Below the pieces are notes generated by a model. That model saw nothing but the letters and a program-made list of their open reading frames with translations, made no database searches and was not told the DNA's origin. Below, in pieces: positions 40,748-53,325 of a DNA stretch of 64,000 bases. The stretch is taken from the IMG/VR virus record IMGVR_UViG_3300043399_000877, positions 310,001 through 374,000 of that record, one strand, 5' to 3'. The translations under genes were made by a program, and so were the position numbers. Each line of letters begins with the position of its first letter. Within the stretch, counting starts at the first letter, position 1.

Positions 40748-41050
40748 TCAGCGTGACGGGAAGTCAACAGGTTTTTTGACGGCGGCGCGGCGTTCTTCCA
40801 TAGTCATGGGTTCTCTGGGTTCTTCAGTCCAGTGACCGCCCCAGCGTCTCCGCTGATTTTCTTCGTATGTCAACTCTTTGCTAAGATATTCGCCACTCCA
40901 ACTGTCAATTACGTCAGCCATTTCGTACAGTGCTGCAATCACACTGTTTTGATCTCCCCAACCGTATTCCATATAAGAGTTAGAATTGCGAGCATTGAGG
41001 AACGCTGCACGTTCTCTCATAGCGTCTGCTAGGCTTTTCGGGTCTTTCAT
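40748..41050 (-). CDS. Hypothetical protein
   Basis: ORF in operon. Confidence 0.55.
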   Translation of the reverse strand: MKDPKSLADAMRERAAFLNARNSNSYMEYGWGDQNSVIAALYEMADVIDSWSGEYLSKELTYEENQRRRWGGHWTEEPREPMTMEERRAAVKKPVDFPSR

Positions 41051-41385
41051 TGGGTTGCACTGCTCCATTTTAAGCTAAAGAATGTTGCATCTCGTTCGTC
41101 TTTAAAATACCAACAGTTACTATAAATTCGATACTCGTCTTTAATAAATTGTCTGCACCATTCATCGCTTATTTTTGCTTTAGTATGCTGTATTACTTCG
41201 GTCCAACCTTGAGATTTTAGTGTAGCCTTTTCGACTTCTCTTAAGACTTCTCGATCAAGTTCTTCTTGTAATATTTTGGCAAGATTGTCGTTTATTTCTG
41301 TGTAAAGATCATCTGCCTTCTCGACGGTCCAAGTTGCTTTCAGAGTTCTGCTTTTTGCTAGTACAACTGTTTTTTCTATTTTCAT
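41047..41385 (-). CDS. Major-capsid-protein (gp23) fragment fused to small paralog domain
   Basis: IEKTVVLAKSRTLKATWTVE...LAKILQEELDREVL resembles T4 gp23 IDKQVIEAKSRQLKAAYSIE...EINREV; C-terminal FKDERDATFFSLKW. Confidence 0.75.
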   Translation of the reverse strand: MKIEKTVVLAKSRTLKATWTVEKADDLYTEINDNLAKILQEELDREVLREVEKATLKSQGWTEVIQHTKAKISDEWCRQFIKDEYRIYSNCWYFKDERDATFFSLKWSSATQ

Positions 41386-41398
41386 TCACTCCACCTCA

Positions 41399-41602
41399 TC
41401 ACTCCCCCGTATACTTTAACATCATTAGCAACATTTCTGACTCACTCTGCACTCGCCTAATATCCGGATATTTTTCAAAGAATCCTTCGCTCGCCTGACC
41501 GGGTTTACAATGCCATACTTTGCTAGCAGTCCAGTCAAATTCTGCCCAATATCCAGTGTCGGGATCAGACAACCGCATCTTGTTTATACGAGTGATTTTC
41601 AT
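41399..41602 (-). CDS. Small paralog-family protein
   Basis: C-terminal SESEMLLMMLKY. Confidence 0.55.
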   Translation of the reverse strand: MKITRINKMRLSDPDTGYWAEFDWTASKVWHCKPGQASEGFFEKYPDIRRVQSESEMLLMMLKYTGE

Positions 41603-41835
41603 TAACCGAACCTTAAAATAAACATGATAGCGTCCCGCTCATTTTCAAAAAGAAAATACCCCACACTGCCTTCAGCGAAGTCAACTTCATATACAAAAGT
41701 TGCACCGAACTTTTGTTTAATATAATCACGAAAAATGCTATCCGATTCGGGATTTTCTTTAAGATAGCGATTTAAGTTTTGATTTTCTTGAACATCTGCA
41801 AAGTATCGCCCGCTCGTTACTTTTATCATGACCAC
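41602..41835 (-). CDS. Small paralog-family protein
   Basis: FENERDAIMFILRFG. Confidence 0.7.
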   Translation of the reverse strand: MVMIKVTSGRYFADVQENQNLNRYLKENPESDSIFRDYIKQKFGATFVYEVDFAEGSVGYFLFENERDAIMFILRFG

Positions 41836-42257
41836 CTCAACAAAAACAAAATATAGTCTCGTTCGTCTTTAAAAGCAAAGAACAATTCGTCACTGCCACC
41901 GATTCCGTTGGGAAGGTATTGTCCTTCGTGGTCCATTATTACACGTTCCCAATGCCAACGGAATTTACCTCGGCAATTTTGATTGCACCAATTGGCAATA
42001 CGTTCACCATTCCAGTATTCACCCCACATAGCATCAAAATTCCAATCAAGATTGCGATACGGTACATGTGCAATATACGGATATCCAAATAACTGGTCTT
42101 TGACAGTATCGCCACGCTCGTTAAAATCAGGATCATATCTCCTAAAATAACGTTCCCAGGTCTGGCAACCGCTCCGTTCGAGCGCGCGGTCCCAACTGCG
42201 TTCAAGTAACAGATATTTTATCCATAAAAATGGGTTGCGGGGTCTTATATCTTTCAT
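41826..42257 (-). CDS. Paralog-family protein
   Basis: WCNQNC...FKDERDYILFLLRWS. Confidence 0.7.
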   Translation of the reverse strand: MKDIRPRNPFLWIKYLLLERSWDRALERSGCQTWERYFRRYDPDFNERGDTVKDQLFGYPYIAHVPYRNLDWNFDAMWGEYWNGERIANWCNQNCRGKFRWHWERVIMDHEGQYLPNGIGGSDELFFAFKDERDYILFLLRWS

Positions 42258-42640
42258 GTTTGGGGCCATCGTAGACTGAACAACAGTGCATCGCGTTCGT
42301 ATGCAAACCAAAAGTCATTCATGCTGCGAATATATGTGCCCGGTTTAAACGTTTTCCGACACCATTCTTTTGCTTCAATTACATCGCTGTAACGGATTCG
42401 GAATTTTTCGTATCCCAGAGACGTAATATAATCCGGATGATGAGCAATACGGCGATTGTAAATTTTTAAGAAATGACCAAAATGCGACTTCGTTAGAACA
42501 ACCCTTCCGCTGTAACCGGTTTTGCTGGTAAGAATATCTATAATCGGACCAGTCATGGGTTGAACGCCCAAGATATCTTGTGCAATTATGGTTGGCATCA
42601 CCCTGCGTATAATAGGTATTAAAACTTTTGCGTCTGACAT
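42254..42640 (-). CDS. Gol-like major-capsid fragment fused to small paralog domain
   Basis: VLIPIIRRVMPTIIAQDILGVQPMTGP resembles gp23 Gol region; C-terminal FAYERDALLFSLRW. Confidence 0.78.
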   Translation of the reverse strand: MSDAKVLIPIIRRVMPTIIAQDILGVQPMTGPIIDILTSKTGYSGRVVLTKSHFGHFLKIYNRRIAHHPDYITSLGYEKFRIRYSDVIEAKEWCRKTFKPGTYIRSMNDFWFAYERDALLFSLRWPQT

Positions 42641-42861
42641 TCCGTTGCCCGCTTTTGTCCACCGCGCCGAAAGTCCCAGCCTTGGCCTCCCATTGCTTCA
42701 AGACTTTTCCACATTTCAGCGATCTCAACGCATTGCCGTGGCTGTCCGATGCTGCCTACCATTGCAAAACAACTGGTACAGCGATAACCCATTTCACTGG
42801 GGATATCGAATTCAGCTGTGCTTCCACAGGGTAAAAATATTTGAGTTGGTGTTGGTATCAT
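42619..42861 (-). CDS. Cys-rich hypothetical protein
   Basis: LPCG...YRCTSCFAMVGSIGQP..C. Confidence 0.6.
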   Translation of the reverse strand: MIPTPTQIFLPCGSTAEFDIPSEMGYRCTSCFAMVGSIGQPRQCVEIAEMWKSLEAMGGQGWDFRRGGQKRATECQTQKF

Positions 42862-42865
42862 GTCG

Positions 42866-43105
42866 TTAACCGTGTTTGAGAATGAATATTGTTAAGTAGC
42901 GTTCATCGCCACTAAACTTGAGGTAGCGTCGTTTATTTTTTTGCACAACAGTAAATCCCTGAGTCCAGAGCCAGTCTTCAAATCTTTGATTTTTGGTAGT
43001 GTTGGGATATTGATATTTTTGTGGCCAACGTGTATCGGCCAAACTGTCTCCGTACTTCCACTTTTGATAAACTCGATCTAAAAAATCAGGATCTAGTATT
43101 GTCAT
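42866..43105 (-). CDS. Small paralog-family protein
   Basis: FSGDERYLTIFILKHG; start reassigned to MTILDPD. Confidence 0.6.
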   Translation of the reverse strand: MTILDPDFLDRVYQKWKYGDSLADTRWPQKYQYPNTTKNQRFEDWLWTQGFTVVQKNKRRYLKFSGDERYLTIFILKHG

Positions 43106-43289
43106 TCGGACACCCAAGCAAAAACAGAGTATGGTACCGTTCTTCACTAAATTGCACATAGTAGTCATTGTATATGAACCCAGTGCATGTAATTTTAAAA
43201 GCACTAGGGTCCAAATTTTTTCTTATCCAGGCAACCCGCGCGCGAACAGTTGGATCGTCTTCATCACCCAAGCAGATTTTCATGACCAC
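43086..43289 (-). CDS. Small paralog-family protein
   Basis: FSEERYHTLFLL. Confidence 0.6.
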   Translation of the reverse strand: MVMKICLGDEDDPTVRARVAWIRKNLDPSAFKITCTGFIYNDYYVQFSEERYHTLFLLGCPNDNTRS

Positions 43290-43543
43290 CTCAGCATAAA
43301 AAGCGTAACATACTTTTCATCGGGGAACTCCAAATCAACATACCTGACTGTTTTGACTATAGTATGATTTTGTACGTGAAGTGTTTTACACTTATAAGTT
43401 TCTTCAAGATACCGATATACGGATTTAGTGCCGTTGAGCCCACCGTTTTTTATTAAAACGTGAACAGACTCGTTAACAGCACGTTTCCAAGAACGGTAAA
43501 TAGGGCTATTGGCCCGTAAACCATGATATTGTATCATCCCCAC
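43280..43543 (-). CDS. Small paralog-family protein
   Basis: FPDEKYVTLFMLRWS. Confidence 0.7.
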   Translation of the reverse strand: MGMIQYHGLRANSPIYRSWKRAVNESVHVLIKNGGLNGTKSVYRYLEETYKCKTLHVQNHTIVKTVRYVDLEFPDEKYVTLFMLRWS

Positions 43544-43731
43544 CTCAATCGCACCAGTGTTAGTTTTTTTGGATCATATACCTGAATTCCCTGAGTCTTC
43601 ATTCTAATTTTGATCCAATCATAGTCTTTACCGGCCTGGCCAACACTACATGACAACCAGTCGCACACTTCTTGGTAGTTTGACGCATCTATGTTAAAGA
43701 AAACACAGTTGTCTTCCATAGTTAGCCCCAC
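43534..43731 (-). CDS. Small paralog-family protein
   Basis: WL...G..GKDYDW...DPKKLTLVRLRWG. Confidence 0.65.
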   Translation of the reverse strand: MGLTMEDNCVFFNIDASNYQEVCDWLSCSVGQAGKDYDWIKIRMKTQGIQVYDPKKLTLVRLRWG

Positions 43732-43925
43732 CTCAGCATAAACAACGTGCGTTTGTGATCGTCAAATATTTTTATACCAGCACACTGGTAATCAATAAAA
43801 ATCAGTTGGTAGTCGACATCTTTTTTGCCCATGTTTTGATCAATCCAAGACAGTAAGCCATGATAATAACCGGCCCGTCGCCGTTCAAACATTATAATGT
43901 CGTCTGTTATACTCTCAGATTTCAT
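43722..43925 (-). CDS. Small paralog-family protein
   Basis: WIDQNMG..DVDY...FDDHKRTLFMLRWG. Confidence 0.65.
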   Translation of the reverse strand: MKSESITDDIIMFERRRAGYYHGLLSWIDQNMGKKDVDYQLIFIDYQCAGIKIFDDHKRTLFMLRWG

Positions 43926-44331
43926 AATCCAAGTCGCCAGTGTCGCTCATGTTGTCACGACGGCCGCGCTGGCCGTCGTACTCTAGATGGCGGATATAAT
44001 TACGCAAATATCTTTCGATATTTTCACGGCCCACGGGATTCATGCTATGAACATAGAAATCAAAATCTGCAGGAATTTCGAGGTTCCCGTCCATATGCTG
44101 GTCCACAATCCACTGAGCAATATTGAAGCCAGTGGGCTCGTTGTTGCCGAGGTCGTGATCGAAAGAAATGAAGTTCGGAGCAATTAATCCATGATTGATT
44201 ATGGCTTGAATTGCTTGATCTCGATTGCGCACAACTGTCCACTGCTGCTCACGATAACGCTCTTGCATACGGCGAGGGGCCCAAGTAACGTCCTGCAAAT
44301 TGCGCTCGTCATCAATAAAAAGATTCCACAT
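43915..44331 (-). CDS. Cyclic-phosphate-processing receiver-like domain protein (RNA repair associated)
   Basis: LFIDDER, ISFDHDLG, TG, VHSMNPVG. Confidence 0.75.
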   Translation of the reverse strand: MWNLFIDDERNLQDVTWAPRRMQERYREQQWTVVRNRDQAIQAIINHGLIAPNFISFDHDLGNNEPTGFNIAQWIVDQHMDGNLEIPADFDFYVHSMNPVGRENIERYLRNYIRHLEYDGQRGRRDNMSDTGDLDYEI

Positions 44332-44352: not shown

Positions 44353-44381
44353 AACCTAGCATGTCTAGCAACATATGTCAA
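44353..44381 (-). promoter_or_regulatory. Sigma70-type promoter
   Basis: TTGACA-17-TAGGTT (TGCTA context). Confidence 0.55.
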
Positions 44382-44391: not shown

Positions 44392-44475
44392 TGGTGCCGC
44401 CGGGGAGACTCGAACTCCCACGACCGAAGTCACAAGCACCTCAAGCTTGCGTGGCTACCATTACACCACGGCGGC
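44392..44475 (-). tRNA. tRNA-Leu(GAG)
   Basis: Cloverleaf, long variable arm, loop TT-GAG-GT, encoded CCA. Confidence 0.9.
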
Positions 44476-44492
44476 AATTGTCCTTAATATAA

Positions 44493-44660
44493 TCATTTAA
44501 GTTTTTGTATGGCATCTTCTATTTGTTTCAACGCAAAAGTAGTAAGGAGATACTCACTTCTTTTGTCACATTTGTCGCTTAAGAAAAGTTCTAAGTTACA
44601 AATAGCAGATTTAATATCACCCTCTATTGTACCTTTTGTGTTAATACAGAACAATCCCAT
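44493..44660 (-). CDS. Small hypothetical protein
   Basis: MGLFCINTKG..., SD GAGG. Confidence 0.5.
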   Translation of the reverse strand: MGLFCINTKGTIEGDIKSAICNLELFLSDKCDKRSEYLLTTFALKQIEDAIQKLK

Positions 44661-44675
44661 GTAACTTCCTCTAAA

Positions 44676-44752
44676 TGGTACCCCCGGCAGGACTCTAACC
44701 CACAACCCTCGCGTTCGAAGCGCGATGCTCTATACAATTGAGCTACGGAGGC
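44676..44752 (-). tRNA. tRNA-Arg(TCG)
   Basis: TCGCG-CT-TCG-AA-CGCGA; T-loop TTAGAGT; CCA. Confidence 0.85.
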
Positions 44753-44757
44753 AAAAA

Positions 44758-45006
44758 TTATCTAAGTCGAGGATTCTGGACAAACCGTCCACCGGCACCG
44801 CGAACTTTAGGACGAACTATCTTGTTCGCCTTCATCTGAGTGGCTGCGATATCACATCCGTCATTGAAACTGGGACTGGAACTGTCACATGGATCCAGTT
44901 TATTACGACTACGAGCGTAGCGATATCCAGCGGCATGACCACTGCAATCTTTGGTGCAGGGTCTGCCCTGGAAAGTTAGTTCGGTTATGATATCACGTAA
45001 CAACAT
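44758..45006 (-). CDS. Late-expressed small protein
   Basis: ATAAATACTGT-ATG; CTKDCSGHAAGY. Confidence 0.65.
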   Translation of the reverse strand: MLLRDIITELTFQGRPCTKDCSGHAAGYRYARSRNKLDPCDSSSPSFNDGCDIAATQMKANKIVRPKVRGAGGRFVQNPRLR

Positions 45007-45021
45007 ACAGTATTTATGCCA

Positions 45022-45387
45022 TTACAGCAGTTTTAGATCCCCGGTTATGGGTTGCAGACGCTCGTGCGTGTCTGGGCCCACAGCAATGCAGGTGTTGGTG
45101 GGCGTGCCGTTAAACACAGTCAAGCCTGCGTCCGTGACAAGCTCAGCGATGAGCCCTGCCGCACGGGCGCGATTGTATACGTCCAGCAACTCTTCCTCGC
45201 TGCTGACACCCACTGCAATCTTGGTAAACTTACCTTCTAGCCATTCTTTGACTCTCGGGTCAGCAAAGTTCACAAGAGTGGCTTTCATGCTTGCATGTGC
45301 GCCCTGCGCGATCTCTTTACCACGCGGCATCTTGAGATCTTTTCTCATTACAATAATCTGTTTCATAGCAGTATCCTTAGTCGTCAA
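45022..45387 (-). CDS. Peptidyl-tRNA hydrolase type 2 (Pth2)
   Basis: KQIIVMRKDLKM..GK..AQGAHA, DAGLT, TCIAVGP, ITGDLKLL. Confidence 0.93.
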   Translation of the reverse strand: MTTKDTAMKQIIVMRKDLKMPRGKEIAQGAHASMKATLVNFADPRVKEWLEGKFTKIAVGVSSEEELLDVYNRARAAGLIAELVTDAGLTVFNGTPTNTCIAVGPDTHERLQPITGDLKLL

Positions 45388-46348
45388 CAGTTACTTCGGT
45401 CTTTGTCTTTTTGGTCTTGATCAGGGAGTAGATGACTCCGGCAGCCAAGATAGCAAAGGTTATAGCCAGTGATATCTCCGGTGGAAATTTTGCCAAGCCA
45501 AGAAGATCGGCTATAAAGATTTTGCTTCCTATAAACACTAGAAGTATAGCCAGTGCTGTTTTTAGGTATTCAAATCTGTGCAGTACCGCCGCAAGAGCAA
45601 AGTACAAGGCTCGCAATCCGAGTATTGCAAAAATATTGCTGGTATAGACAATGAACGGATCTGTTGTAATAGCAAAAACAGCAGGCACACTATCGACTGC
45701 AAAAATCAAATCTGCAAGTTCAACAAGAACCAGTGCAAGGAACAGCGGAGTCACAAACCATTTGCCGGCATGTTTTACGAAGAAACTGTTGCCGTGTAGT
45801 CGTTCGGTTACGTTGAATTTTGCCCTCATGAACTTTAGGGCAGGATTGTTTTCCAAGTCTGTTTCGGACTCTTTTACAAACAACATCTTGACGCCGGTAA
45901 AGATCAAGAACGCAGCAAAAATGTAAAGTATCCAACCAAACTGGCTAACAAGCGTTGCACCCAGCCCAATCATAATACCACGAAGGACGATAACGCCCAA
46001 AATACCCCAGAAAAGAACGCGGTGTTGATATTCTTTTGGAATAGAGAAGAAGCTGAAAATAAGAGCTATAACAAAGATGTTATCGAGCGCCAGTGTTTTC
46101 TCTACAACAAAAGCAGTTAGGTATTCAAATGACTGAACTGCACCGATCTGATACCAGACAAAACCGGAAAATGCCAGTCCTATTGCGATATAAACCGCTG
46201 AAAGTCTTAGACTTTCAGCAACACCGATTTCATGAGAATCTCGATGCAAAACACCTAGGTCAAAAACCAGCAGTGCAAGGACGATTGCCAAAAACAGCAA
46301 CCACATCCACACCGGAGTGCCTAGAAAGAGAAGTGTTAAAAATTCCAA
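45377..46348 (-). CDS. TerC/Alx-family membrane protein
   Basis: EKTLALDNIFV, QHRVLFWG, DLIFAVDSVPA, SNIFAILGLRALYF. Confidence 0.93.
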   Translation of the reverse strand: MEFLTLLFLGTPVWMWLLFLAIVLALLVFDLGVLHRDSHEIGVAESLRLSAVYIAIGLAFSGFVWYQIGAVQSFEYLTAFVVEKTLALDNIFVIALIFSFFSIPKEYQHRVLFWGILGVIVLRGIMIGLGATLVSQFGWILYIFAAFLIFTGVKMLFVKESETDLENNPALKFMRAKFNVTERLHGNSFFVKHAGKWFVTPLFLALVLVELADLIFAVDSVPAVFAITTDPFIVYTSNIFAILGLRALYFALAAVLHRFEYLKTALAILLVFIGSKIFIADLLGLAKFPPEISLAITFAILAAGVIYSLIKTKKTKTEVTVDD

Positions 46349-46374
46349 TTATTTTCCCCTGTATGAGTCGTTAT

Positions 46375-46590
46375 TTACTGGTCAGTTCGCCATCTTTTGC
46401 GACAATCTGGACAGAAAAAATCTATCCAATAACTGTCAGCACTAGGGTCATAATTACCGGTGTTGCTGTCATATTTTTTAGTCACACCGGGATGAGTGCA
46501 TAATGCCTGCAACTTCGCAAGTTCATGGGCTAAACGTTCTTCTCTGCGATCGATACTAGCCCATTTACGCCTAACCTGCGCTGGCGTCAT
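46375..46590 (-). CDS. Small Zn-binding hypothetical protein
   Basis: CTH...CPDC. Confidence 0.6.
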   Translation of the reverse strand: MTPAQVRRKWASIDRREERLAHELAKLQALCTHPGVTKKYDSNTGNYDPSADSYWIDFFCPDCRKRWRTDQ

Positions 46591-47015
46591 GATGCAGCCT
46601 CCTTTTCAATATATCGTGAACACTTTGCACGATCCGTCATGTTGCGTTCGGCTAGGTCTTCCCAAAATTTTTCATTTGGTTTTACCACGCTGTACGCGAG
46701 TTGGCCCCCAAAATAGACCAAACACTCTCTGTTGTAGTTGCTGCTGAGAACCACAGTATATGCCGTGCTCACAGCAGCGCCTCCGATGCCCCCGTGCCCG
46801 AGTGCTGTGCTGCCCCAGGTTTGTGGGAACATTCCGATTACGGAAAAATCACGAGTGGTGTGACGACGTGTTTTCTTAACGGTGGCGTTCTTATCACCAC
46901 TTCGGCGGAATTCTTCCCAATCACGAGAGTCGTACTCAATCTCGGAAAATCCCGCGTACTCAGCATGTGCCAAAACTGCGGCAAGTTCTCCGATTGGATT
47001 ATCAGTGTAGGTCAT
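46587..47015 (-). CDS. Conserved hypothetical phage protein
   Basis: FPQTWGSTALG.GGIGG. Confidence 0.7.
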   Translation of the reverse strand: MTYTDNPIGELAAVLAHAEYAGFSEIEYDSRDWEEFRRSGDKNATVKKTRRHTTRDFSVIGMFPQTWGSTALGHGGIGGAAVSTAYTVVLSSNYNRECLVYFGGQLAYSVVKPNEKFWEDLAERNMTDRAKCSRYIEKEAAS

Positions 47016-47358
47016 CGTAAGGTTCTCCTCGAGTGCGCAACACTCTCCATGTGTATTCTTTTTCTACTCGTTCTGCGTAACGTTTGCGCATCCCATCCGG
47101 ATCAGTCATCCAGTATTTCATACCTTCCGGGTGTCCATAGCTGTGCGCTGGCGCATTGAAATTGAGCCAACGAACAATATCCGGAAGTCGCTGGATGTTA
47201 ATATGATCAGCACTGGTGATTGCCCCGTAAAGGTTGTTGCACAACACATTTGTCAAAAAACCTCCGGGCGGTAATCCGTAAACCAGATAGTTATCTAGAG
47301 ATTTTCTAGTGTGTTCCGGAATTTCTCGTCCATAGCTGTCACTATCAAAATCAATCAT
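47002..47358 (-). CDS. Hypothetical protein
   Basis: PPGGFLTNVLCNNL...AD. Confidence 0.65.
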   Translation of the reverse strand: MIDFDSDSYGREIPEHTRKSLDNYLVYGLPPGGFLTNVLCNNLYGAITSADHINIQRLPDIVRWLNFNAPAHSYGHPEGMKYWMTDPDGMRKRYAERVEKEYTWRVLRTRGEPYDDLH

Positions 47359-47764
47359 GCACATTTGTTGTCCCATTCGGAAAAAATACCATGGTTGGCT
47401 TGCCGGTTTTCTTCGCATAGTCGTGCGTATACCAAGTGCCGCCGTTGTTCTGCCACGAATTTTGATATGGCACAACTAACAGCACATCACACTCATTGAC
47501 TATCTGTCTATTTCTTGCGAAATAACTGAGTGGTTCTCGAAAATCGTCTGATCGGTGGTGCGCCCTAAGTTCTGTTTTAATCGGTGGATGACAGACCACC
47601 TTAATACCCATTTCCGCAGCCAATATAGCAACCTGTTCATCTACTCCCACACAGTCTCCGTGATGCAATTCTGTGATGCCGTTTCGACTGGTTAGATAGT
47701 TTCTAACCAGTCGAAACTGTTCATCATTCATTCCGGAACGGGTACCAGTTACGCCAACTTTCAT
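47351..47764 (-). CDS. SLOG/DprA-like nucleotide-binding protein
   Basis: VGVTGTR, HHGDCVGVD, ARNRQIV, GGTWYT. Confidence 0.7.
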   Translation of the reverse strand: MKVGVTGTRSGMNDEQFRLVRNYLTSRNGITELHHGDCVGVDEQVAILAAEMGIKVVCHPPIKTELRAHHRSDDFREPLSYFARNRQIVNECDVLLVVPYQNSWQNNGGTWYTHDYAKKTGKPTMVFFPNGTTNVHD

Positions 47765-48279
47765 TATCTCTCGTTCCATTGTCCAACAATGCTCATAGCA
47801 TGTTTCATATGCTTGTAAAGCAATCCGTTTTCTGGATCAGTTCGTACTAGGCGTTTTTTGCCCAGCACTTCGTCAAATCGATAAGCGTTGTCATCAAACA
47901 AGATGAAGTCACGCACGTCAGTTCCGTAGTTAGCAAGGTACTCTTGAACCTCGTGTGCGCGGTCATTAAGACCTGCACGTTGCCAGATAACGTTATCCGG
48001 ATCAGTTTTCCACGGGCTTGCAAGTTTTCCACGGAAGCCGCTGTTGCCGAAGGCAGCAGAGACCCAGTGCAGCACCATATTGTCATCGTTACGGAGATAA
48101 TTTTTCCAGGTTGACATAAGAACAAACTCAACCGGGTAACGGTCGTGAAGTTTGTTCATGAAATCAACAGCAACCGGGTCAAAGCGATGCCACATTTCAT
48201 AAGTGGCGTTATGTGCATAATGCACACGGCTGCTGGTAAAGACGCCGTCGATGTCTAAAAAAACTAGATATCTGCTCAT
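47764..48279 (-). CDS. HAD-family phosphatase (Swiss-Army-knife RNA repair type)
   Basis: FLDIDGV, STW, R..EV, ILFDD, GL. Confidence 0.8.
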   Translation of the reverse strand: MSRYLVFLDIDGVFTSSRVHYAHNATYEMWHRFDPVAVDFMNKLHDRYPVEFVLMSTWKNYLRNDDNMVLHWVSAAFGNSGFRGKLASPWKTDPDNVIWQRAGLNDRAHEVQEYLANYGTDVRDFILFDDNAYRFDEVLGKKRLVRTDPENGLLYKHMKHAMSIVGQWNER

Positions 48280-48302
48280 AGCACCACACCTTTCTTAGAG
48301 TT

Positions 48303-48331
48303 AATATAGTGTAGATATATCTGTGTGTCAA
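48303..48331 (-). promoter_or_regulatory. Sigma70-type promoter
   Basis: TTGACA-17-TATATT. Confidence 0.7.
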
Positions 48332-48345
48332 GTAAGATTACGATC

Positions 48346-48900
48346 TTACCAGACACTCCAGATGTGTTTTTTACCGAGATAGGTGTCGGGATAGGGAAGA
48401 TAATCCCAGTCTTGATCTTTGAGGACACGACGTTCAAGCTGACGAACAGCGTTGCGAACAGTCTCTTTGCTGAGAGTTTTGTAAGCAGTGTTGCAGCCAG
48501 TTTCGTTGCCGTATCCGTCTCGAGTACGTTTTGCAAATTCGCGACGAGCCCAGTCACGTTCTGCTTCCCAATCAATGTCACAAGGTTCGTAACGGAACTT
48601 GCTAACATAATAACGATAACGTTCGGGCAATGCACGAACATAGCAACTGTACATAATGCTTTCGGGATTGTTCCAACAAAACCAATAGTTTTTGCGGACT
48701 ACCCGGCAGTCAGCTTCGTAACGTGCTTCTGCTGCTGCAACTTCGTGTTGGTATTCTTCCTGAGTTTTCTTCACTTTTTTACGGTGATACATGCCAGGAT
48801 ATCTGGCGGCGCGAAGCGCCAGATCTTTTATATGCTCATCCACGTATTGAGATTCCGATTTGGAATGATCAAACTTGGGTTTACGGTACGTTCTACTCAT
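48346..48900 (-). CDS. Basic hypothetical protein (MSRTYRK start)
   Basis: SD AAGGAG partly inside an upstream hairpin. Confidence 0.7.
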   Translation of the reverse strand: MSRTYRKPKFDHSKSESQYVDEHIKDLALRAARYPGMYHRKKVKKTQEEYQHEVAAAEARYEADCRVVRKNYWFCWNNPESIMYSCYVRALPERYRYYVSKFRYEPCDIDWEAERDWARREFAKRTRDGYGNETGCNTAYKTLSKETVRNAVRQLERRVLKDQDWDYLPYPDTYLGKKHIWSVW

Positions 48901-48908
48901 TTTGACTC

Positions 48909-48957
48909 CTTATAAGCTATTAGCTCATAAGTCGTCGTAAAACTTTCTGTATCTCAT
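48909..48957 (-). promoter_or_regulatory. 10-codon uORF (MRYRKFYDDL) plus SD-occluding hairpin
   Basis: uORF 48957-48925; 10-bp stem CTTATGAGCT/AGCTTATAAG. Confidence 0.55.
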
Positions 48958-48972
48958 TTCGTTTCCTTTATT

Positions 48973-49077
48973 TGGTGGAGAGGGATGGAATCGAACCATC
49001 GACGCGGCAAGTTACCAGCCTGCCCGCTCTACCCAGACCAACTTCAAGATTGGTGATCTTGCTGAGCTACCGTCTCC
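48973..49077 (-). tRNA. Atypical tRNA-Thr(GGT)-like RNA with D-loop insertion
   Basis: GCTC/GAGC D-stem with 34-nt loop, 6-bp anticodon stem with CT-GGT-AA loop, normal T-arm, CCA. Confidence 0.6.
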
Positions 49078-49084
49078 GTTATTT

Positions 49085-49160
49085 TGGCGCCCCCGGCAGG
49101 AGTCGAACCCACAACCTAGGGAGTAGAAATCCCTTGCTCTTCCAGTTGAGCTACGAAGGC
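49085..49160 (-). tRNA. tRNA-Arg(TCT)
   Basis: AGGGA-TT-TCT-AC-TCCCT; CCA. Confidence 0.92.
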
Positions 49161-49393
49161 ATGTCATTTAGTAATTCATTTAGAACTGCGTCAACCAGTT
49201 CTTCTACGAACTCATCTTCTTCACTTGCGAGTACAAAATCGTCTGCACTCATAGTACCAACCACCCATGCATCCCAGTGCCGTGTGCAAAACATTGCATC
49301 AGACAAAGATTCTCTAACGCGGTCTCGGAGTCGCCGTTTTAACGGCTCCGACACAGTTGCAATCAGGGCACGTCGGTCAAGTGCAGTGGTCAC
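49151..49393 (-). CDS. Hypothetical protein
   Basis: CTRHWDAWVVGTMSADDF motif; stop lies within tRNA-Arg(TCT). Confidence 0.65.
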   Translation of the reverse strand: MTTALDRRALIATVSEPLKRRLRDRVRESLSDAMFCTRHWDAWVVGTMSADDFVLASEEDEFVEELVDAVLNELLNDMPS

Positions 49394-49833
49394 AACACGT
49401 AAACCACTGGTTCAACGTCAGTCATTTCATCTTCGATGATCTGACTGATAATGTTCCAATTCCCGCCGCCGAGCCCAGCACCGATTTGCGGCATAGCAAC
49501 CTGCGTTTCACCACTTTGACGAAGAACGCTGTTGATGGTGCGCATACAATCAGCCACTGCTTCGTAGTTCACAAAACGACTACCGTCTCGACCATACAAA
49601 TGCTGAGTAATTGCGTTGATGATTACTTTGCCATTTGAAGGTACAAACTGTACATCACCCAGCTTGAGGCCATGCTCGTCGTACTGCTCAACATAAAACC
49701 GGTATGCGTCAAAGTGGTCGTCACGAACTATACGTGCAACACCTGAACCCATAACGCCCTGGGCATTGCAACCGTGTGCAATGTGCAGGATGTCGGTCTC
49801 GAAAAGATTGCCCTTGCGGTATTGGATTTTCAT
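49390..49833 (-). CDS. Macro domain (ADP-ribose processing) protein
   Basis: GNLF, HGCNAQGVMGSGVA, MPQIGAGLGGGNW. Confidence 0.9.
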   Translation of the reverse strand: MKIQYRKGNLFETDILHIAHGCNAQGVMGSGVARIVRDDHFDAYRFYVEQYDEHGLKLGDVQFVPSNGKVIINAITQHLYGRDGSRFVNYEAVADCMRTINSVLRQSGETQVAMPQIGAGLGGGNWNIISQIIEDEMTDVEPVVYVL

Positions 49834-49836
49834 CTT

Positions 49837-49950
49837 TTACTTCCGGAAAAGATTGGTAACTTTTGCTTGCAGGTCTTTTGCCCATTGCGGCTGAGGAAGG
49901 TTCCAACCAATACCCAGTCCGATAGCGATTCCAACTGCTAGTGTAAACAT
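49837..49950 (-). CDS. 37-aa membrane peptide
   Basis: Hand-translated MFTLAVGIAIGLGIGWNLPQPQWAK...; SD AAGGAG; promoter upstream. Confidence 0.65.
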   Translation of the reverse strand: MFTLAVGIAIGLGIGWNLPQPQWAKDLQAKVTNLFRK

Positions 49951-49972
49951 CTGTGTCTCCTTTGTTAACTGT

Positions 49973-50001
49973 AATATAGTGCCGGGTGTTGCTGTTGTCA
50001 A
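49973..50001 (-). promoter_or_regulatory. Sigma70-type promoter
   Basis: TTGACA-17-TATATT. Confidence 0.7.
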
Positions 50002-50013
50002 GCAACAATACGA

Positions 50014-50586
50014 TTAATCGTCTATTGCCAATGGATCTGTGATAACTGGAACCGATCCACGAAACATAAGATTTGATATTCCGAAATCTAAATCATATTG
50101 CCCGTGTTGTTTTAATTTTTCCAATACTGCCATGATTTCTGGATAAGACCTTGATATATCAGCAACTACTCGTTGATACTGGTCACGATCTCTTCCATCA
50201 TTTGAGAGTATGTAATCGATCATATTGAACACATTACGATTATCTGTGCTGCGCGGATCAAAACTATCAAGCCGTTCCATTCTCACTACGCGAAAGTTGT
50301 TGGGAAGTTTTATAATATTTCCACGAAGTTTTGGAACATGAGGGTTCCCGCGTAGCTGCATAATGTACTGTAAATACTGATCATAACCGGCGTCGTTTTT
50401 ATAAATTTTAACAACGTAATCGGCGCCCGGTTTAGCCAACACATGGGCATATAATCCGCTCCCCAAAGATTCAAACTCAAATCCACGCTGCTGTAGTTGT
50501 TTGACGTAATCTTCTACGCCCAAGACCTCTTGGGCAGAAGCATACGCTGGGTTTTTTCTGTATCCGGTTAATTCACGTAATCGCAT
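50014..50586 (-). CDS. Protein-kinase-like protein (T7 gp0.7-like)
   Basis: LGSGLYAHV, VVKI, HVPK, MERL, DFGISNLM, ITDP; TATAAATACTGT-ATG start. Confidence 0.7.
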   Translation of the reverse strand: MRLRELTGYRKNPAYASAQEVLGVEDYVKQLQQRGFEFESLGSGLYAHVLAKPGADYVVKIYKNDAGYDQYLQYIMQLRGNPHVPKLRGNIIKLPNNFRVVRMERLDSFDPRSTDNRNVFNMIDYILSNDGRDRDQYQRVVADISRSYPEIMAVLEKLKQHGQYDLDFGISNLMFRGSVPVITDPLAIDD

Positions 50587-50600
50587 ACAGTATTTATATT

Positions 50601-50678
50601 TGGTACTCCCGAGAGGATTCGAACCCCTGACCTTCGCGTTCGTAGCGCGACGCTCTAATTCCACTGAGCTACGGGAGT
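50601..50678 (-). tRNA. tRNA-Arg(ACG)
   Basis: TCGCG-CT-ACG-AA-CGCGA; CCA. Confidence 0.92.
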
Positions 50679-50679
50679 A

Positions 50680-51162
50680 TTAATTTATCGATCGATTATC
50701 GGCAAATTGAATAGTTTTTCCAACATAGTTGGCTTCGGCACCGGTCATCATAGCGCGACCGGAGGATTCCAGATCCCAAACAAAATCTGCCATAAATTCT
50801 TGAATGTCTCCGGTCACCTTTTTTAGTTTGTTGACCACCGCTGCGTTTATTGGTCTTACAGCTTCCAATTCTTGCTGGACTTCTGGTGGCAGGTTTCCCG
50901 TCACCGGTACCCATTGTGGTGGATTGGCGTTTCCGAGTTCTGAATGTATTTTGCCCATAACACCGGTTTGGGGGTCATACTCGGTACCCTTGGTTGACTC
51001 ATCTTCAACAGCATTTGCAAGCATCATGAATGTTCTTGCAACGTCCGGTGCAGCTTTAATCAACCAAACATCACCGTCTGCAAATTCATCTATATAACCT
51101 ATGAGAACAGTATTTGCACTTTCATTAATACTGTCTAATTTATTCAGTAATGATCTAAACAC
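50680..51162 (-). CDS. Late hypothetical protein
   Basis: ATAAATA, SD AAGGAG, GTG start MFRSLLNKLDSINES. Confidence 0.65.
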   Translation of the reverse strand: MFRSLLNKLDSINESANTVLIGYIDEFADGDVWLIKAAPDVARTFMMLANAVEDESTKGTEYDPQTGVMGKIHSELGNANPPQWVPVTGNLPPEVQQELEAVRPINAAVVNKLKKVTGDIQEFMADFVWDLESSGRAMMTGAEANYVGKTIQFADNRSIN

Positions 51163-51197
51163 AGCGACTCCTTTTTTATTATTTATGTGAAAGTCTC

Positions 51198-51272
51198 TGG
51201 TGCAGCCTGGAGGATTTGAACCTCCGACATCTGTCGAGTCAGGACAGCGCTCTACCACTGAGCTAAGGCTGC
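51198..51272 (-). tRNA. tRNA-Val(GAC)
   Basis: CTGTC-CT-GAC-TC-GACAG; CCA. Confidence 0.88.
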
Positions 51273-51273
51273 A

Positions 51274-51351
51274 TGGAACTGGCTGGGGGATTTGAACCCG
51301 CCGCTACAAGATCCACAATCTTGTGTGCTAAACCGCTAACACTAAACCAGC
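51274..51351 (-). tRNA. tRNA-His(GTG)
   Basis: CAAGA-TT-GTG-GA-TCTTG; G1:U72, no G-1. Confidence 0.88.
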
Positions 51352-51355
51352 ATTA

Positions 51356-51547
51356 TTAGATTACAATGAACTTGTGATCAGTCAATTCTTCTCTAAGAAC
51401 AAAGTCCTCGTCGAGTTTTACAACTTGCCCTTCTAAAACTCGTTCAATAAGTTTCTTGCTCTCTGCAAGGCTCATTCCAGTGTGCTGTCTCACAGACAGT
51501 ATAGCACTATATGAATTTGCGCCTTTTTTAAAACCTATGATTTGCAT
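51356..51547 (-). CDS. Ribosomal protein L7/L12 C-terminal-like domain
   Basis: AILSVRQHTGMSLAESKKLIE resembles VIK.VR..TGLGLKEAK.LVE. Confidence 0.65.
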   Translation of the reverse strand: MQIIGFKKGANSYSAILSVRQHTGMSLAESKKLIERVLEGQVVKLDEDFVLREELTDHKFIVI

Positions 51548-51563
51548 ACCGATACTCCTCTAT

Positions 51564-51634
51564 TGGTGCCCCCTGTAGGAATCGAACCTACCGATCCGGG
51601 CTTAGGACGCCTGAGCCGGCCCAGCGGAGAGGGC
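51564..51634 (-). tRNA. Atypical tRNA-Arg(CCT) with reduced D-arm
   Basis: 7-bp acceptor, loop GT-CCT-AA, GTAGG-TTCGATT-CCTAC, CCA; 71 nt. Confidence 0.6.
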
Positions 51635-51640
51635 TAAATT

Positions 51641-51718
51641 TGGCGGATAAGGTTGGACTCGAACCAACAACGCAAGGCCTCAACCTGGCACCCGCTCTAC
51701 CTCTTGAGCTACCGATCC
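51641..51718 (-). ncRNA. tRNA-like RNA with degenerate anticodon arm (GTT-centred loop)
   Basis: Canonical D- and T-arms and CCA; anticodon arm GCC-AGGTTGA-GGC irregular. Confidence 0.55.
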
Positions 51719-51729
51719 GCATAATATTT

Positions 51730-51879
51730 TGTCAGCGAACTACAAGCTGGTGGACTCGAACGCACCATCGCCGGCTGTACGCCGGTGTCCTATCCTTTAG
51801 ACGAAACTTCAATCTTATCAGCACTTTTCCGCACCCCGGCGTGGGTTGGGAAGTTACTGGCAACAAAGGTTCGCTGACA
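51730..51879 (-). ncRNA. About 150-nt structured RNA containing a tRNA-like domain
   Basis: Perfect 11-bp closing stem TGTCAGCGAAC/GTTCGCTGACA enclosing a hairpin and D/anticodon/T-like arms; no CCA. Confidence 0.6.
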
Positions 51880-51902
51880 TGGACGATCGCCGCGCCCTAA
51901 CT

Positions 51903-51979
51903 TGGTTGTCCCTCTCGGAGTCGAACCGAGGACCCCAGTCTTATCAGGACTGTGCTCTAACCACCTGAGCTAAGGGACA
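51903..51979 (-). tRNA. tRNA-Ile(GAT)
   Basis: CAGTC-CT-GAT-AA-GACTG; CCA. Confidence 0.93.
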
Positions 51980-51987
51980 GAAATTTT

Positions 51988-52064
51988 TGGTGTGCCGGGT
52001 GAGATTTGAACCCACGACCTTGGAGTTAAGAGCTCCCTGCTCTAGACCACTGAGCTACCGGCGC
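51988..52064 (-). tRNA. tRNA-Lys(CTT)
   Basis: GGAG-CT-CTT-AA-CTCC; CCA. Confidence 0.9.
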
Positions 52065-52070
52065 ATTATT

Positions 52071-52137
52071 TGGAAGATACGCTCGCTCTCCCAGCCAGGG
52101 CACTTTCGCTCCCCAACAAAAGCACAAGCGTATCATC
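52071..52137 (-). ncRNA. CCA-ended long hairpin RNA
   Basis: GATACGCTTG/CGAGCGTATC stem, GAAA apical loop, ends TTCCA. Confidence 0.4.
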
Positions 52138-52144
52138 GAAATAA

Positions 52145-52231
52145 TGGTGAACCGGGTAGGATTTGAACCTACGTTGGCATTGCTGCTACAGATTAAAAGT
52201 CTGTCCCCATCGGCCTCTCGGGCACCGGTCC
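52145..52231 (-). tRNA. tRNA-Lys(TTT) with class II (long variable arm) body
   Basis: ACAGA-CT-TTT-AA-TCTGT; variable arm GCA-GCAA-TGC; CCA. Confidence 0.8.
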
Positions 52232-52370
52232 TAATGAATTCTGTGAAGTTTTGCTTTTCACGTTTGCGTTTCGATTTATATGGTTTATCGTGTGCGCCCG
52301 CAACTCGAAACCGTGCTGCGGCCACAAACGGATTCCTCTGTTTAGGAATCTTCTGACGTTTTCGTTTCAT
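52232..52370 (-). CDS. Small basic protein, possible alternative ribosome-rescue factor; no stop before the tRNA
   Basis: MKRKRQKIPKQRNPFVAAARFRVAGAHDKPYKSKRKREKQNFTEFI; frame continues through tRNA genes to 52026. Confidence 0.55.
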
Positions 52371-52512
52371 CTAAAAATCTTTCCTTGTATTTGCGTATAG
52401 CTGCTATCAGTGCCGCTGTGGGCGCGGGTGGTCGGTTACACGCTTCTACGATACGGTCATACTCTTCCTGAGTCAACAGTATCGTCTCGGTCTCCTGATC
52501 GGTCGTCTTCAT
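52342..52512 (-). CDS. DUF1778/TacA-antitoxin C-terminal-like peptide (56 aa)
   Basis: Hand-translated MKTTDQETETILLTQEEYDRIVEACNRPPAPTAALIAAIRKYKERF... Confidence 0.6.
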   Translation of the reverse strand: MKTTDQETETILLTQEEYDRIVEACNRPPAPTAALIAAIRKYKERFLDETKTSEDS

Positions 52513-52645
52513 TTTTTCTACTTCCTGCTCGGTTCATTACTATAAGATATTCTGGATCAGTAACTCCAAAATCTCCGGGATTCTGTATAATCTGCTCCAT
52601 CTGCTGTTCTGACAGCAATGAAAAAAAACTGTTTGATCCAGTCAT
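52457..52645 (-). CDS. Small hypothetical protein
   Basis: SD AGGAG before ATG. Confidence 0.5.
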   Translation of the reverse strand: MTGSNSFFSLLSEQQMEQIIQNPGDFGVTDPEYLIVMNRAGSRKNEDDRSGDRDDTVDSGRV

Positions 52646-52661
52646 TTTTTACTCCTGTTAA

Positions 52662-52737
52662 TGGTCCCCAGGGACGGGATCGAACCGCCGACACCATGCT
52701 CTTCAGGCACGTGCTCTACCAACTGAGCTACCTGGGG
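52662..52737 (-). tRNA. tRNA-Phe(GAA)
   Basis: CGTGC-CT-GAA-GA-GCATG; CCA. Confidence 0.92.
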
Positions 52738-52743
52738 ATTATT

Positions 52744-52829
52744 TGGTGGGTCGTCTAGGAATCGAACCTAGCATGGGAGTTAACCCGGCGGATTTACAAT
52801 CCGCTGCCACACCTTGTAGCATACGACCC
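52744..52829 (-). tRNA. tRNA-Tyr(GTA)
   Basis: GCGGA-TT-GTA-AA-TCCGC; long variable arm; CCA. Confidence 0.9.
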
Positions 52830-53141
52830 TTAAATTATGTTATTTTGTCTATCAAATTCTTCTTCGTCGAACTCGTCTAGTGTACAAGTGGGATTCCAAA
52901 TGTACACGTCTGTTCGTTTAGCGCCTTTGCCAATAGTAAACTCGGCCCAACCAGTGGGAATTGGTCGATCCCATCCGTTGCGCTTTGCATCCTTGACTGA
53001 ACTGAATTTACCAATTCTAGCCAGCAAGTGTGCCATATTTGTCTCTGTTTCCAGAATCGGCAACAGGACATTTGTGTCTGCAAACAGCATTGTCTTGTCT
53101 GATTCTTCGCATTTTTTACCGATAAAACAAAACTCAGCCAT
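52830..53141 (-). CDS. TyrRS C-terminal/S4-like RNA-binding protein
   Basis: MAHLLARIGKFSSVKDAKRNGW...FTIGKG. Confidence 0.55.
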   Translation of the reverse strand: MAEFCFIGKKCEESDKTMLFADTNVLLPILETETNMAHLLARIGKFSSVKDAKRNGWDRPIPTGWAEFTIGKGAKRTDVYIWNPTCTLDEFDEEEFDRQNNII

Positions 53142-53160
53142 TTTCAGTTCCTCTTGTGTT

Positions 53161-53238: not shown

Positions 53239-53243
53239 ATGTT

Positions 53244-53319: not shown

Positions 53320-53325
53320 GTTATA

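What the first reader, a model, noticed from the sequence alone, without database searches (positions are those of the whole stretch)
42254..42640. Stand-alone Gol-peptide-like capsid fragment fused to a small domain
Seen: N-terminus VLIPIIRRVMPTIIAQDILGVQPMTGP, then an unrelated domain ending FAYERDALLFSLRW, far from any capsid gene. Established (recalled): the T4 gp23 Gol peptide AVMGMVRRAIPNLIAFDICGVQPMNSPTG binds EF-Tu and triggers the Lit protease, and capsid proteins trigger several defences (e.g. CapRel). Inference: a capsid-epitope decoy that titrates capsid-sensing defences, an EF-Tu-binding effector, or a dominant-negative against competing phages.
Basis: partly seen in the sequence, partly recalled or inferred. 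Interest (0 to 1): 0.85.

Follow-up and report, generated by a model that had tools for sequence, protein, structure and literature searches.

The report
Capsid-peptide mimic on a small domain
A giant phage carries a small, conserved accessory gene whose product displays a copy of the most conserved stretch of its own capsid protein on an uncharacterised domain; it belongs to a large undescribed family that probably works by mimicking the capsid protein, though the partner it engages is unknown.

Summary
ORF 42254-42640 (-) encodes 128 aa. Residues 5-43 match Pfam Gp23 above its curated cut-off, and the core is 12/20 identical to the T4 Gol core and 19/27 identical to this phage's own capsid protein, whose gene lies about 163 kb away on the 382-kb source contig.

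The remainder is a confidently folded domain of about 80 aa with no known relative. It is the ninth member of a tandem array of small paralogues that share a C-terminal "F.F..ERDA..F.LRW" module. A second array member, 41047-41385, carries a different capsid piece: the E-loop return strand plus the spine helix.

Both genes co-occur, N-piece first, in nine uncultured jumbo-phage loci. The capsid-like segment is under purifying selection (dN/dS 0.04-0.18). A profile of the domain finds 301 clusters, and 51 of the best 150 carry a Gp23 segment; no other family recurs. No cultured phage has the domain.

My best reading (about 0.35) is an early accessory capsid mimic that engages a host factor recognising this invariant capsid stretch, that is, a counter-defence. 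EF-Tu targeting, capsid docking and competitor poisoning remain open. Nothing was tested functionally.

The parts
42254..42640 (-). Focal gene: 128-aa protein made of a capsid N-arm/Gol-like peptide plus a conserved C-terminal domain
   Evidence: ORF listed. Full-length homologues P0001-P0016 are 45-90% identical. Orthologues were found in loci L002, L004, L005, L008, L010, L011, L014 and L187.
42512..42628 (-). Capsid-derived segment (residues 5-43), predicted not to fold on its own
   Evidence: Pfam Gp23 at 37.4 bits, profile positions 6-44. 19/27 identical to the phage's own capsid protein, 54/81 nt identical, third codon positions 8/27. AF2 pLDDT is 46-51 over residues 1-40. dN/dS is 0.04-0.18 in the unsaturated pairs.
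42266..42508 (-). Conserved domain of about 80 aa (K.HY.HFLR.YNRRK ... WC ... FWFAYERDA.LF.LRW), with a beta-alpha-beta-beta-alpha core
   Evidence: AF2 pLDDT is about 90 or higher. Invariant residues are K, F, N, R, Y, W, G, F, F, A, F. A profile finds 301 clusters. There was no match in PDB sequences, Foldseek PDB, Pfam, NCBIfam or PADLOC.
41047..41385 (-). Second capsid-fragment gene: 112 aa, made of the E-loop return strand, the spine helix and an LRW-tail domain
   Evidence: Pfam Gp23 at 35.4 bits, residues 1-75 to profile positions 136-219. It aligns to T4 gp23 residues 253-306 and to the phage's own capsid protein residues 153-208. The family P0192-P0204 is 49-90% identical. In the AF2 model residues 1-20 have low confidence, residues 21-58 form a long helix, and residues 62-107 form the domain at pLDDT 85-91.
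41047..43946 (-). Tandem array of nine small paralogues sharing the C-terminal module F.F..ERDA..F.LRW
   Evidence: Motif scan. An HMM built from eight seeds recovers a ninth member, 43086-43316, at E 4e-8 and nothing else in the 64 kb.
42619..42861 (-). 80-aa Cys-rich (zinc-ribbon-like) ORF that overlaps the focal start by 22 nt
   Evidence: The same protein lies directly upstream of the focal orthologue in L004, L005, L008 and L010.
44353..44381 (-). Sigma70-like promoter motif TTGACA-N17-TAGGTT, 22 nt upstream of the first gene of the transcription unit that holds the array
   Evidence: The pattern TTGACA-N13-16-GCTANNTT occurs three times in the window (0.02 expected), always on the minus strand just upstream of a gene. 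The pattern was derived post hoc from these same sites.

Best explanation
The gene encodes an accessory, probably early-expressed, molecular mimic. A flexible N-terminal peptide of about 40 residues copies the invariant N-arm/Gol block of T4-type major capsid proteins. It is displayed on a compact conserved domain of about 80 residues. A neighbouring paralogue displays the capsid piece that lies next to it in the folded capsid protein (E-loop return strand and spine helix). My proposal is that the peptide occupies the site of a cellular factor that recognises this capsid block, such as a Lit-like protease/EF-Tu complex or another capsid sensor. It would do so before the real capsid protein appears late in infection, and the folded domain would make the complex unproductive. 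That would make it a counter-defence decoy. Shown here: the anatomy, the homology to the capsid protein, conservation, purifying selection, the size of the family, accessory status and a promoter-like motif. Inferred only: early timing, binding by mimicry, the identity of the partner and the protective outcome.
For: The capsid homology is significant. The peptide keeps the residues that are conserved from T4 to jumbo phages, IRR..P..IA.DI.GVQPM. It is predicted disordered while the domain is confident, and the second fragment protein has the same layout. Selection is purifying on the peptide, with silent sites saturated and third positions only 8/27 identical to the phage's own capsid gene, so the copy is ancient and maintained rather than a recent duplicate. 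The gene is accessory: cultured relatives with a 69%-identical capsid protein and the same block lack the domain. It sits in a plastic array of small genes downstream of tRNA genes, behind a sigma70-like promoter. The family is large and paralogue-rich, with N-terminal peptides ranging from near-perfect to eroded, as expected in a conflict. Of the 301 clusters, 51 of the best 150 carry Gp23 and no other Pfam family recurs. Four members occur in one 518-kb contig. From the literature: a 29-aa Gol peptide is enough for recognition by EF-Tu/Lit and is the most conserved part of gp23 (PMC3014915), and several defence families sense capsid proteins, one of them using EF-Tu (bioRxiv 10.64898/2026.01.04.697583).
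Against: There is no functional or interaction data of any kind. A free Gol peptide activates Lit in T4/E. coli, so an early Gol-like peptide could trigger such a defence rather than block it. EF-Tu is far too abundant to be titrated. Sensors such as Avs7 envelop the whole capsid protein and would not be fooled by a 40-aa piece. The host is unknown. The early-promoter inference rests on a motif I derived from the same sites. The conserved polar residues of the domain (K, H, R, N, R, R, D) could indicate an activity unrelated to decoying.
Confidence: 0.35

Rival explanations
1. Capsid-associated accessory protein. The N-arm copy (and, in the partner protein, the E-loop strand and spine helix) docks onto the scaffold, the portal or the capsid lattice in place of a capsid-protein arm. 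The small domain is thereby loaded into the head as cargo or added as cement or decoration.
For: In T4 the gp23 N-terminal region up to about residue 105 is disordered in the prohead and faces the scaffolding core. It later becomes the N-arm/N-fist that makes inter-capsomer and Soc contacts. Met98 (in the Gol block) pairs with His282/Met284 (in the region covered by the second fragment) at the portal (PMC9546572). The two fragments are collinear with the capsid protein and adjacent in its fold. Non-essential head proteins are also variably present among relatives. In T4, ipI lies just downstream of the tRNA genes, a comparable position.
Against: The gene lies about 163 kb from the head module, in an array behind a sigma70-like promoter, with no TATAAATA late motif nearby. 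No conserved prohead-protease site (L/I-x-E) follows the peptide. Foldseek shows no resemblance to known decoration or internal proteins. Only two of the nine array members carry capsid pieces.
Confidence: 0.2
2. EF-Tu-directed effector. The Gol-like peptide binds domains II-III of host EF-Tu as T4 Gol does, and the conserved basic domain acts on EF-Tu, tRNA or the ribosome to retune translation.
For: The core is 12/20 identical to the T4 Gol core. Gol binds EF-Tu:GDP and inhibits its GTPase, and conservation of this block has been attributed to EF-Tu binding (PMC3014915). The domain has an invariant K/H/R/N-R-R cluster. The gene sits next to 15 tRNA genes.
Against: The partner protein carries a capsid piece outside the Gol region yet has the same architecture, which EF-Tu binding does not explain. 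EF-Tu makes up 6-10% of the proteome, so a stoichiometric effect is unlikely. An 80-aa domain with no enzyme-like fold match is weak ground for proposing catalysis.
Confidence: 0.15
3. Dominant-negative poison of capsid assembly, aimed at co-infecting or superinfecting T4-type phages.
For: Fragments of assembling proteins often poison assembly. The genes are accessory and paralogue-rich.
Against: The mimicked 43-aa block is essentially invariant in 118 distinct capsid proteins of the clade, including the phage's own. A poison would therefore hit the phage's own capsid too, and there is no visible basis for discriminating self from non-self.
Confidence: 0.08
4. Non-functional relic of a decayed capsid-gene duplicate, or a chance resemblance.
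For: The two fragments are collinear with the capsid protein, as relics of one duplicated gene would be. T4 has such relics (alt.-1/alt.-2). Some paralogues have eroded peptides.
Against: The Pfam score is above the curated cut-off. dN/dS is 0.04-0.18. The reading frames are intact in all loci examined and the architecture is conserved across 301 clusters.
Confidence: 0.02

Closest known systems
T4 gp23 Gol peptide (activator of the e14 Lit protease through EF-Tu)
   Same: It is the homologous stretch of a T4-type major capsid protein, with 12/20 identical residues in the core and the GVQPM motif retained. A short peptide of this region is known to be sufficient for recognition (PMC3014915).
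   Different: Gol is part of the 521-aa capsid protein, not a separate gene. Here the stretch is a stand-alone protein fused to another domain, is probably expressed early, and diverged from the phage's own capsid gene long ago. Binding to EF-Tu or Lit was not tested.
Pfam PF07068 Gp23 (T4-type major capsid proteins)
   Same: Significant homology to profile positions 6-44 (focal protein) and 136-219 (partner protein).
   Different: Only about 10% (focal) and 22% (partner) of the profile is present. There are no P- or A-domains, so neither protein can form an HK97 fold or a shell.
T4 Srd and Srh (small early proteins annotated as postulated decoys resembling pieces of host sigma factors)
   Same: They are small early accessory proteins of a T4-type phage whose proposed action is mimicry of a fragment of a larger protein (annotation seen).
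   Different: They resemble host proteins, not the phage's own structural protein. There is no sequence relationship, and their decoy role is itself only postulated.
T4 internal proteins with an N-terminal capsid-targeting sequence, and encapsulin cargo-loading peptides
   Same: A short terminal peptide directs a small domain to an HK97-type shell or its scaffold. T4 ipI lies next to the tRNA genes.
   Different: Those peptides are not copies of the capsid protein. In T4 the peptide is followed by a protease site, which is absent here. There is no sequence or fold similarity.

Membership tests
Pfam PF07068 Gp23 major capsid protein | Sequence score above the curated gathering threshold | tested here: met
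   37.4 bits against 24.4 for the focal protein and 35.4 bits for 41047-41385.
Pfam PF07068 Gp23 major capsid protein | A complete HK97-type fold (N-arm, E-loop, P-domain, A-domain; about 376 profile positions) able to build a shell | tested here: not met
   Only profile positions 6-44 are matched. The remaining 85 residues form an unrelated small domain. The protein is a homologous fragment, not a capsid protein.
Gol peptide / Lit-EF-Tu system | Sequence correspondence to the 29-residue Gol region of gp23 | tested here: met
   It aligns to T4 gp23 residues 98-121, with a core identity of 12/20.
Gol peptide / Lit-EF-Tu system | Binds EF-Tu domains II-III and licenses Lit cleavage of EF-Tu | not testable with these tools
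   This needs binding and cleavage assays or multimer modelling. The tools fold single chains only.
LRW-tail paralogue family (undescribed; defined here) | C-terminal beta-alpha-beta-beta-alpha module ending F.F..E.DA..F.L(R/K)W | tested here: met
   An HMM built from 24 seeds scores the focal ORF at E 1.5e-15 (it was itself a seed) and finds an unseeded ninth member at E 4e-8. The AF2 secondary structure agrees.
Capsid-peptide + YNRR/FWF domain family (undescribed; defined here) | N-terminal peptide of about 40-60 aa followed by the domain K.HY.HFLR.(Y/N)NRRK...WC...FWFA..DA.LF.L.W | tested here: met
   301 clusters at E<=1e-3. The domain typically starts at residue 40-60. 51 of the best 150 hit Gp23.
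T4-type internal proteins (capsid-targeting sequence) | N-terminal targeting peptide followed by a conserved prohead-protease site (L/I-x-E) | tested here: not met
   No conserved L/I-x-E lies between the peptide and the domain in the 17-sequence alignment.
Known defence or annotated prokaryotic families (PADLOC, NCBIfam, PHROGs, PDB) | Any significant profile or fold match for the C-terminal domain | tested here: not met
   There were no hits. BFVD and Atlas return only uncharacterised phage proteins.

The most novel reading that the evidence does not exclude
Jumbo phages with T4-type capsids carry a large, previously unnoticed family of 'self-mimic' proteins. These display the invariant N-arm/Gol block (and, in partner proteins, the adjoining E-loop strand and spine helix) of their own capsid protein on a dedicated small domain. 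Made early, they pre-empt host immune receptors that use this block as a molecular pattern. This would be the first case of a virus of bacteria decoying immunity with a piece of its own capsid.
Probability: 0.3. Interest if true: 0.9.

Novelty: categorically new. Interest (0 to 1): 0.75.

Why it matters
Capsid proteins are now known to be sensed by several bacterial immune systems (Lit, CapRel, Avs7/8/10), but no phage counter-measure based on capsid mimicry has been described. The Gol block is the most conserved part of T4-type capsid proteins, for reasons that are still debated: EF-Tu binding, scaffold contact or portal contact. A natural, portable, selected copy of exactly this block, present in hundreds of variants, gives a direct handle on what the block binds. 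If the family proves to be counter-defence, it defines a new strategy. If it proves to be capsid-associated, it defines a new way of addressing proteins to HK97-type shells. Either way the 80-aa domain and the wider LRW-tail family are uncharacterised and abundant in uncultured jumbo phages.

Tried and rejected
- **Terminase or portal fragments.** I suspected that paralogues L016:5839-6234 and L015:5821-6234 carried a terminase Walker-A or a portal fragment. Pfam Portal_T4 gave only E 0.027, below its cut-off. blastp against the GAP32 portal gave E 0.11. By eye they look more like eroded copies of the capsid strand or Gol segment. The 'display of many structural proteins' idea was dropped, and the Pfam scan of 150 members found only Gp23 recurring.
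- **T4 Cef relationship.** This was suggested by a weak hit at E 0.15. The T4 Cef sequence shows no LRW motif, and the LRW HMM finds nothing in the T4 and GAP32 regions I fetched (about 76 kb of T4 and about 20 kb of GAP32).
- **Late promoter.** TATAAATA occurs twice in the window, neither site is near the array, and the count is no more than chance. The generic promoter/terminator scan was uninformative.
- **Fold identification.** Foldseek against PDB gave nothing below E 0.9. A PDB profile search gave nothing.
- **Cultured relatives.** tblastn of the domain, of a paralogue and of the second fragment found nothing. An apparent 92%-coverage hit in Pseudomonas phage Cygsa01 was simply its real capsid gene.
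- **Co-variation of fragment and cognate capsid protein.** I could pair only one genome, because the capsid genes of the 374-kb and 518-kb contigs were not among the 80 loci returned.
- **Context of divergent members.** The contigs were too short to be informative.
- **In-frame upstream 'LSARWT'.** This is identical to capsid residues 167-172 but is not conserved in the 90% homologue, so I judged it chance.

Full report
**1. What is there**

The finding's coordinates hold an uninterrupted minus-strand ORF, 42254-42640, with an ATG start and 128 aa. The quoted N-terminal string occupies residues 6-32 and the quoted C-terminal string residues 112-125. The start overlaps the preceding 80-aa Cys-rich ORF (42619-42861) by 22 nt.

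Residues 5-43 match Pfam Gp23 (PF07068) at 37.4 bits against a curated cut-off of 24.4 (E 2.6e-9), aligned to profile positions 6-44 of 376. PHROG 138, 'major head protein', agrees.

tblastn against 50,697 GenBank phage records returns 898 records. Every one is a capsid gene, and every one is hit only through residues 5-44. The best are the roughly 350-kb GAP32/CBB/Yen9-04/BF group, at 62.5% identity and E 1e-9.

**2. Where it comes from**

The window is a piece of IMGVR_UViG_3300043399_000877, a contig of 381,886 bp. It has the gene content of a T4-superfamily jumbo phage:
- a gp9/10-like baseplate protein;
- a ClpA/B-like AAA+ protein;
- DNA and RNA ligases;
- UvdE and TerC;
- 15 tRNA genes.

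The window itself holds no capsid gene. The contig's own capsid gene is 394 aa, 69% identical to that of GAP32, and lies at about 189 kb. The focal gene lies at about 352 kb.

Against its own capsid protein the fragment is 19/27 identical in the core and 52% identical over 50 aa. At the DNA level identity is only 54/81, with third codon positions at 8/27, which is about random. The fragment is therefore an ancient copy maintained at the protein level, not a recent duplicate or a gene-conversion tract.

**3. The rest of the protein and its neighbours**

AlphaFold2 with a 17-sequence alignment gives pLDDT 46-51 for residues 1-40 and about 90 or higher for residues 45-128. The core is beta-alpha-beta-beta-alpha. 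The layout is thus a flexible displayed peptide on a compact domain. The domain has no match in:
- Pfam, NCBIfam or PADLOC;
- PDB sequences;
- Foldseek against PDB.

BFVD and the ESM Atlas return only uncharacterised phage proteins.

The C-terminal motif is shared by a tandem run of small minus-strand ORFs between 41047 and 43946. An HMM built from eight of them (plus orthologues) recovers a ninth, unseeded member at E 4e-8 and nothing else in the 64 kb.

One of these, 41047-41385 (112 aa), also passes the Gp23 threshold at 35.4 bits, but through a different piece of the profile, positions 136-219. This piece corresponds to the phage's own capsid residues 153-208 and to T4 gp23 residues 253-306, that is, the E-loop return strand and the spine helix. 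Its AF2 model has the same logic. The strand part (residues 1-20) has low confidence, residues 21-58 form one long helix, and the shared domain follows at pLDDT 85-91.

In T4 the two captured regions are neighbours in the folded subunit. Met98 (in the Gol block) and His282/Met284 (in the second region) form one cluster at the portal. The region up to about residue 105 is disordered in the prohead, faces the scaffold, and later becomes the N-arm/N-fist (PMC9546572).

**4. Conservation**

A search of 5.8 billion proteins finds 16 full-length homologues of the focal protein. They are 45-90% identical and 127-175 aa long, and nearly all were pre-annotated with PF07068. The second protein has 13 homologues at 49-100% identity.

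Both genes are present in the window and in eight further loci, from contigs between 5 kb and 374 kb. They are in the same orientation, with the N-piece gene first and the mid-piece gene zero to about five genes downstream. The loci are L002, L004, L005, L008, L009, L010, L011 and L187.

In pairs whose silent sites are not saturated, dN/dS is as follows:

| Region | dN/dS |
|---|---|
| Capsid-like segment | 0.04-0.18 |
| C-terminal domain | 0.04-0.09 |

**5. Size of the family**

A profile of the 81-position domain was searched against 1.84 billion cluster representatives. It finds 301 clusters at E<=1e-3 and 81 at E<=1e-10. Nearly all are 80-165 aa, with the domain starting at residue 40-60.

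Of the best 150, 51 hit Pfam Gp23 at E<=0.01 (best 4e-17), and no other Pfam family is hit by more than one member. By eye, many more carry eroded versions of the same peptide. A few carry the AKSR.L.A.W strand instead.

One 518-kb contig has four members of this subfamily, and both that contig and a 200-kb contig have arrays of at least 11 LRW-tail paralogues. One of these has DUF6745 (MORN-like) repeats as its N-terminal module.

None of the domain, the paralogues or the second fragment protein is found in GenBank phages by tblastn. Yet the capsid block they copy is essentially invariant over 43 residues in 118 distinct capsid proteins of the clade. The fragments differ from that block at positions that never vary in real capsid proteins (TVIANE becomes TIIAQD), and the fragment orthologues share these differences. 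This again points to one old capture followed by independent evolution.

**6. Expression context**

The array is tightly packed and lies downstream of two tRNA genes. Twenty-two nucleotides upstream of the first gene of the unit is TTGACA-N17-TAGGTT. The extended pattern occurs three times in the window (0.02 expected), each time on the coding strand just before a gene. I derived the pattern from these sites, so the statistic is generous. The T4 late motif TATAAATA is not near the array. I infer early transcription by host RNA polymerase with moderate confidence.

**7. How it most likely works**

Shown:
- a displayed copy of a capsid peptide on a conserved domain;
- a partner carrying the adjacent capsid piece;
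- selection on both parts;
- accessory status;
- a large, paralogue-rich family.

From this I infer that the protein acts by mimicry of the capsid N-arm/Gol block. The question is what it mimics the block for.

The gene is dispensable in close relatives that have the same capsid block. It sits in a plastic early-type array. Its family shows the turnover typical of conflict genes. For these reasons I favour a counter-defence role. The peptide would occupy a host factor that reads this invariant block, and the domain would make the complex unproductive. The precedents are that 29 residues of Gol suffice for EF-Tu/Lit (PMC3014915) and that capsid-sensing Avs families exist, one of them using EF-Tu (bioRxiv 10.64898/2026.01.04.697583).

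My confidence is about 0.35. The main objection is that a free Gol peptide activates Lit rather than blocking it.

**8. Rival explanations**

- **Capsid docking (about 0.2).** The protein would dock onto the scaffold, portal or lattice through the N-arm copy, as cargo or cement. T4 structural data support this. The gene's position, the promoter motif and the lack of a protease site argue against it.
- **EF-Tu effector (about 0.15).** This does not explain the second fragment.
- **Poison of competitors' assembly (about 0.08).** This is hard to reconcile with the invariance of the target, which includes the phage's own capsid protein.
- **Relic (about 0.02).** Selection excludes this.

**9. Comparison with what is known**

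The protein is homologous to part of Gp23 but fails the defining feature of a capsid protein, a complete HK97 fold. It corresponds in sequence to Gol, but the defining activity could not be tested. It has no relationship to known decoration, internal or defence proteins.

Full-text searches for capsid decoys or mimics in phages, and for small Gp23-fragment proteins in jumbo phages, found nothing. I therefore treat the family as undescribed.

**10. Verdict**

- The family is real, widespread and not assignable to any known kind.
- Interest is 0.75.

Noticed in passing
window 41047-41385 (-): A second small protein carries a different capsid fragment (E-loop return strand plus spine helix, Pfam Gp23 positions 136-219) fused to the same kind of C-terminal module. 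It is always found downstream of the focal gene in related phages.
   Followed up: yes
window 41047-43946 (-): A tandem array of nine small paralogues ends in F.F..ERDA..F.LRW. The family has no known relative, and related contigs hold arrays of 11 or more (L014, L187).
   Followed up: partly
window 44353-44381, 55072-55099, 63496-63524 (all -): A recurrent sigma70-like motif, TTGACA-N13-16-GCTANNTT, lies just upstream of genes. It is probably this phage's early-promoter consensus.
   Followed up: partly
window 42619-42861 (-): An 80-aa Cys-rich (zinc-ribbon-like) ORF overlaps the focal start. It holds the same position directly upstream of the focal orthologue in four other loci, so the two may be translationally coupled partners.
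   Followed up: no
window 42641-42697 (-), in frame upstream of the focal ATG: The frame reads ...LSARWT..., identical to residues 167-172 of the phage's own capsid protein. It is not conserved in the 90% homologue and overlaps the upstream gene, so I judged it chance.
   Followed up: partly
L006:3920-4709 (33-kb ENA contig): Another phage has an 81-aa plus a 190-aa pair of overlapping ORFs. Both hit Gp23, and together they look like a shortened or split capsid paralogue. They lie beside a 601-aa DUF7487 protein among nucleotide-metabolism genes.
   Followed up: no
L187:5348-5839 (200-kb IMG/VR contig): An LRW-tail paralogue has DUF6745 (MORN-like) repeats as its N-terminal module. This suggests the C-terminal module is a common handle for varied binding modules.
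   Followed up: no
L018-L177 (capsid loci from IMG/VR): A 43-residue block of the capsid protein, ATLN(R/K)VILPVIRRVMPTVIANE..GVQPMTGPV.QIHTLRVRY, is essentially invariant in 118 distinct sequences whose overall identity falls to about 65%.
   Followed up: partly
window 4569-6845 (-), 45377-46348 (-), 28166-29188 (-), 44392-53400 (-): The phage encodes a 758-aa ClpA/B-like double AAA+ protein, a TerC membrane protein, a UvdE UV endonuclease and 15 tRNA genes.
   Followed up: no
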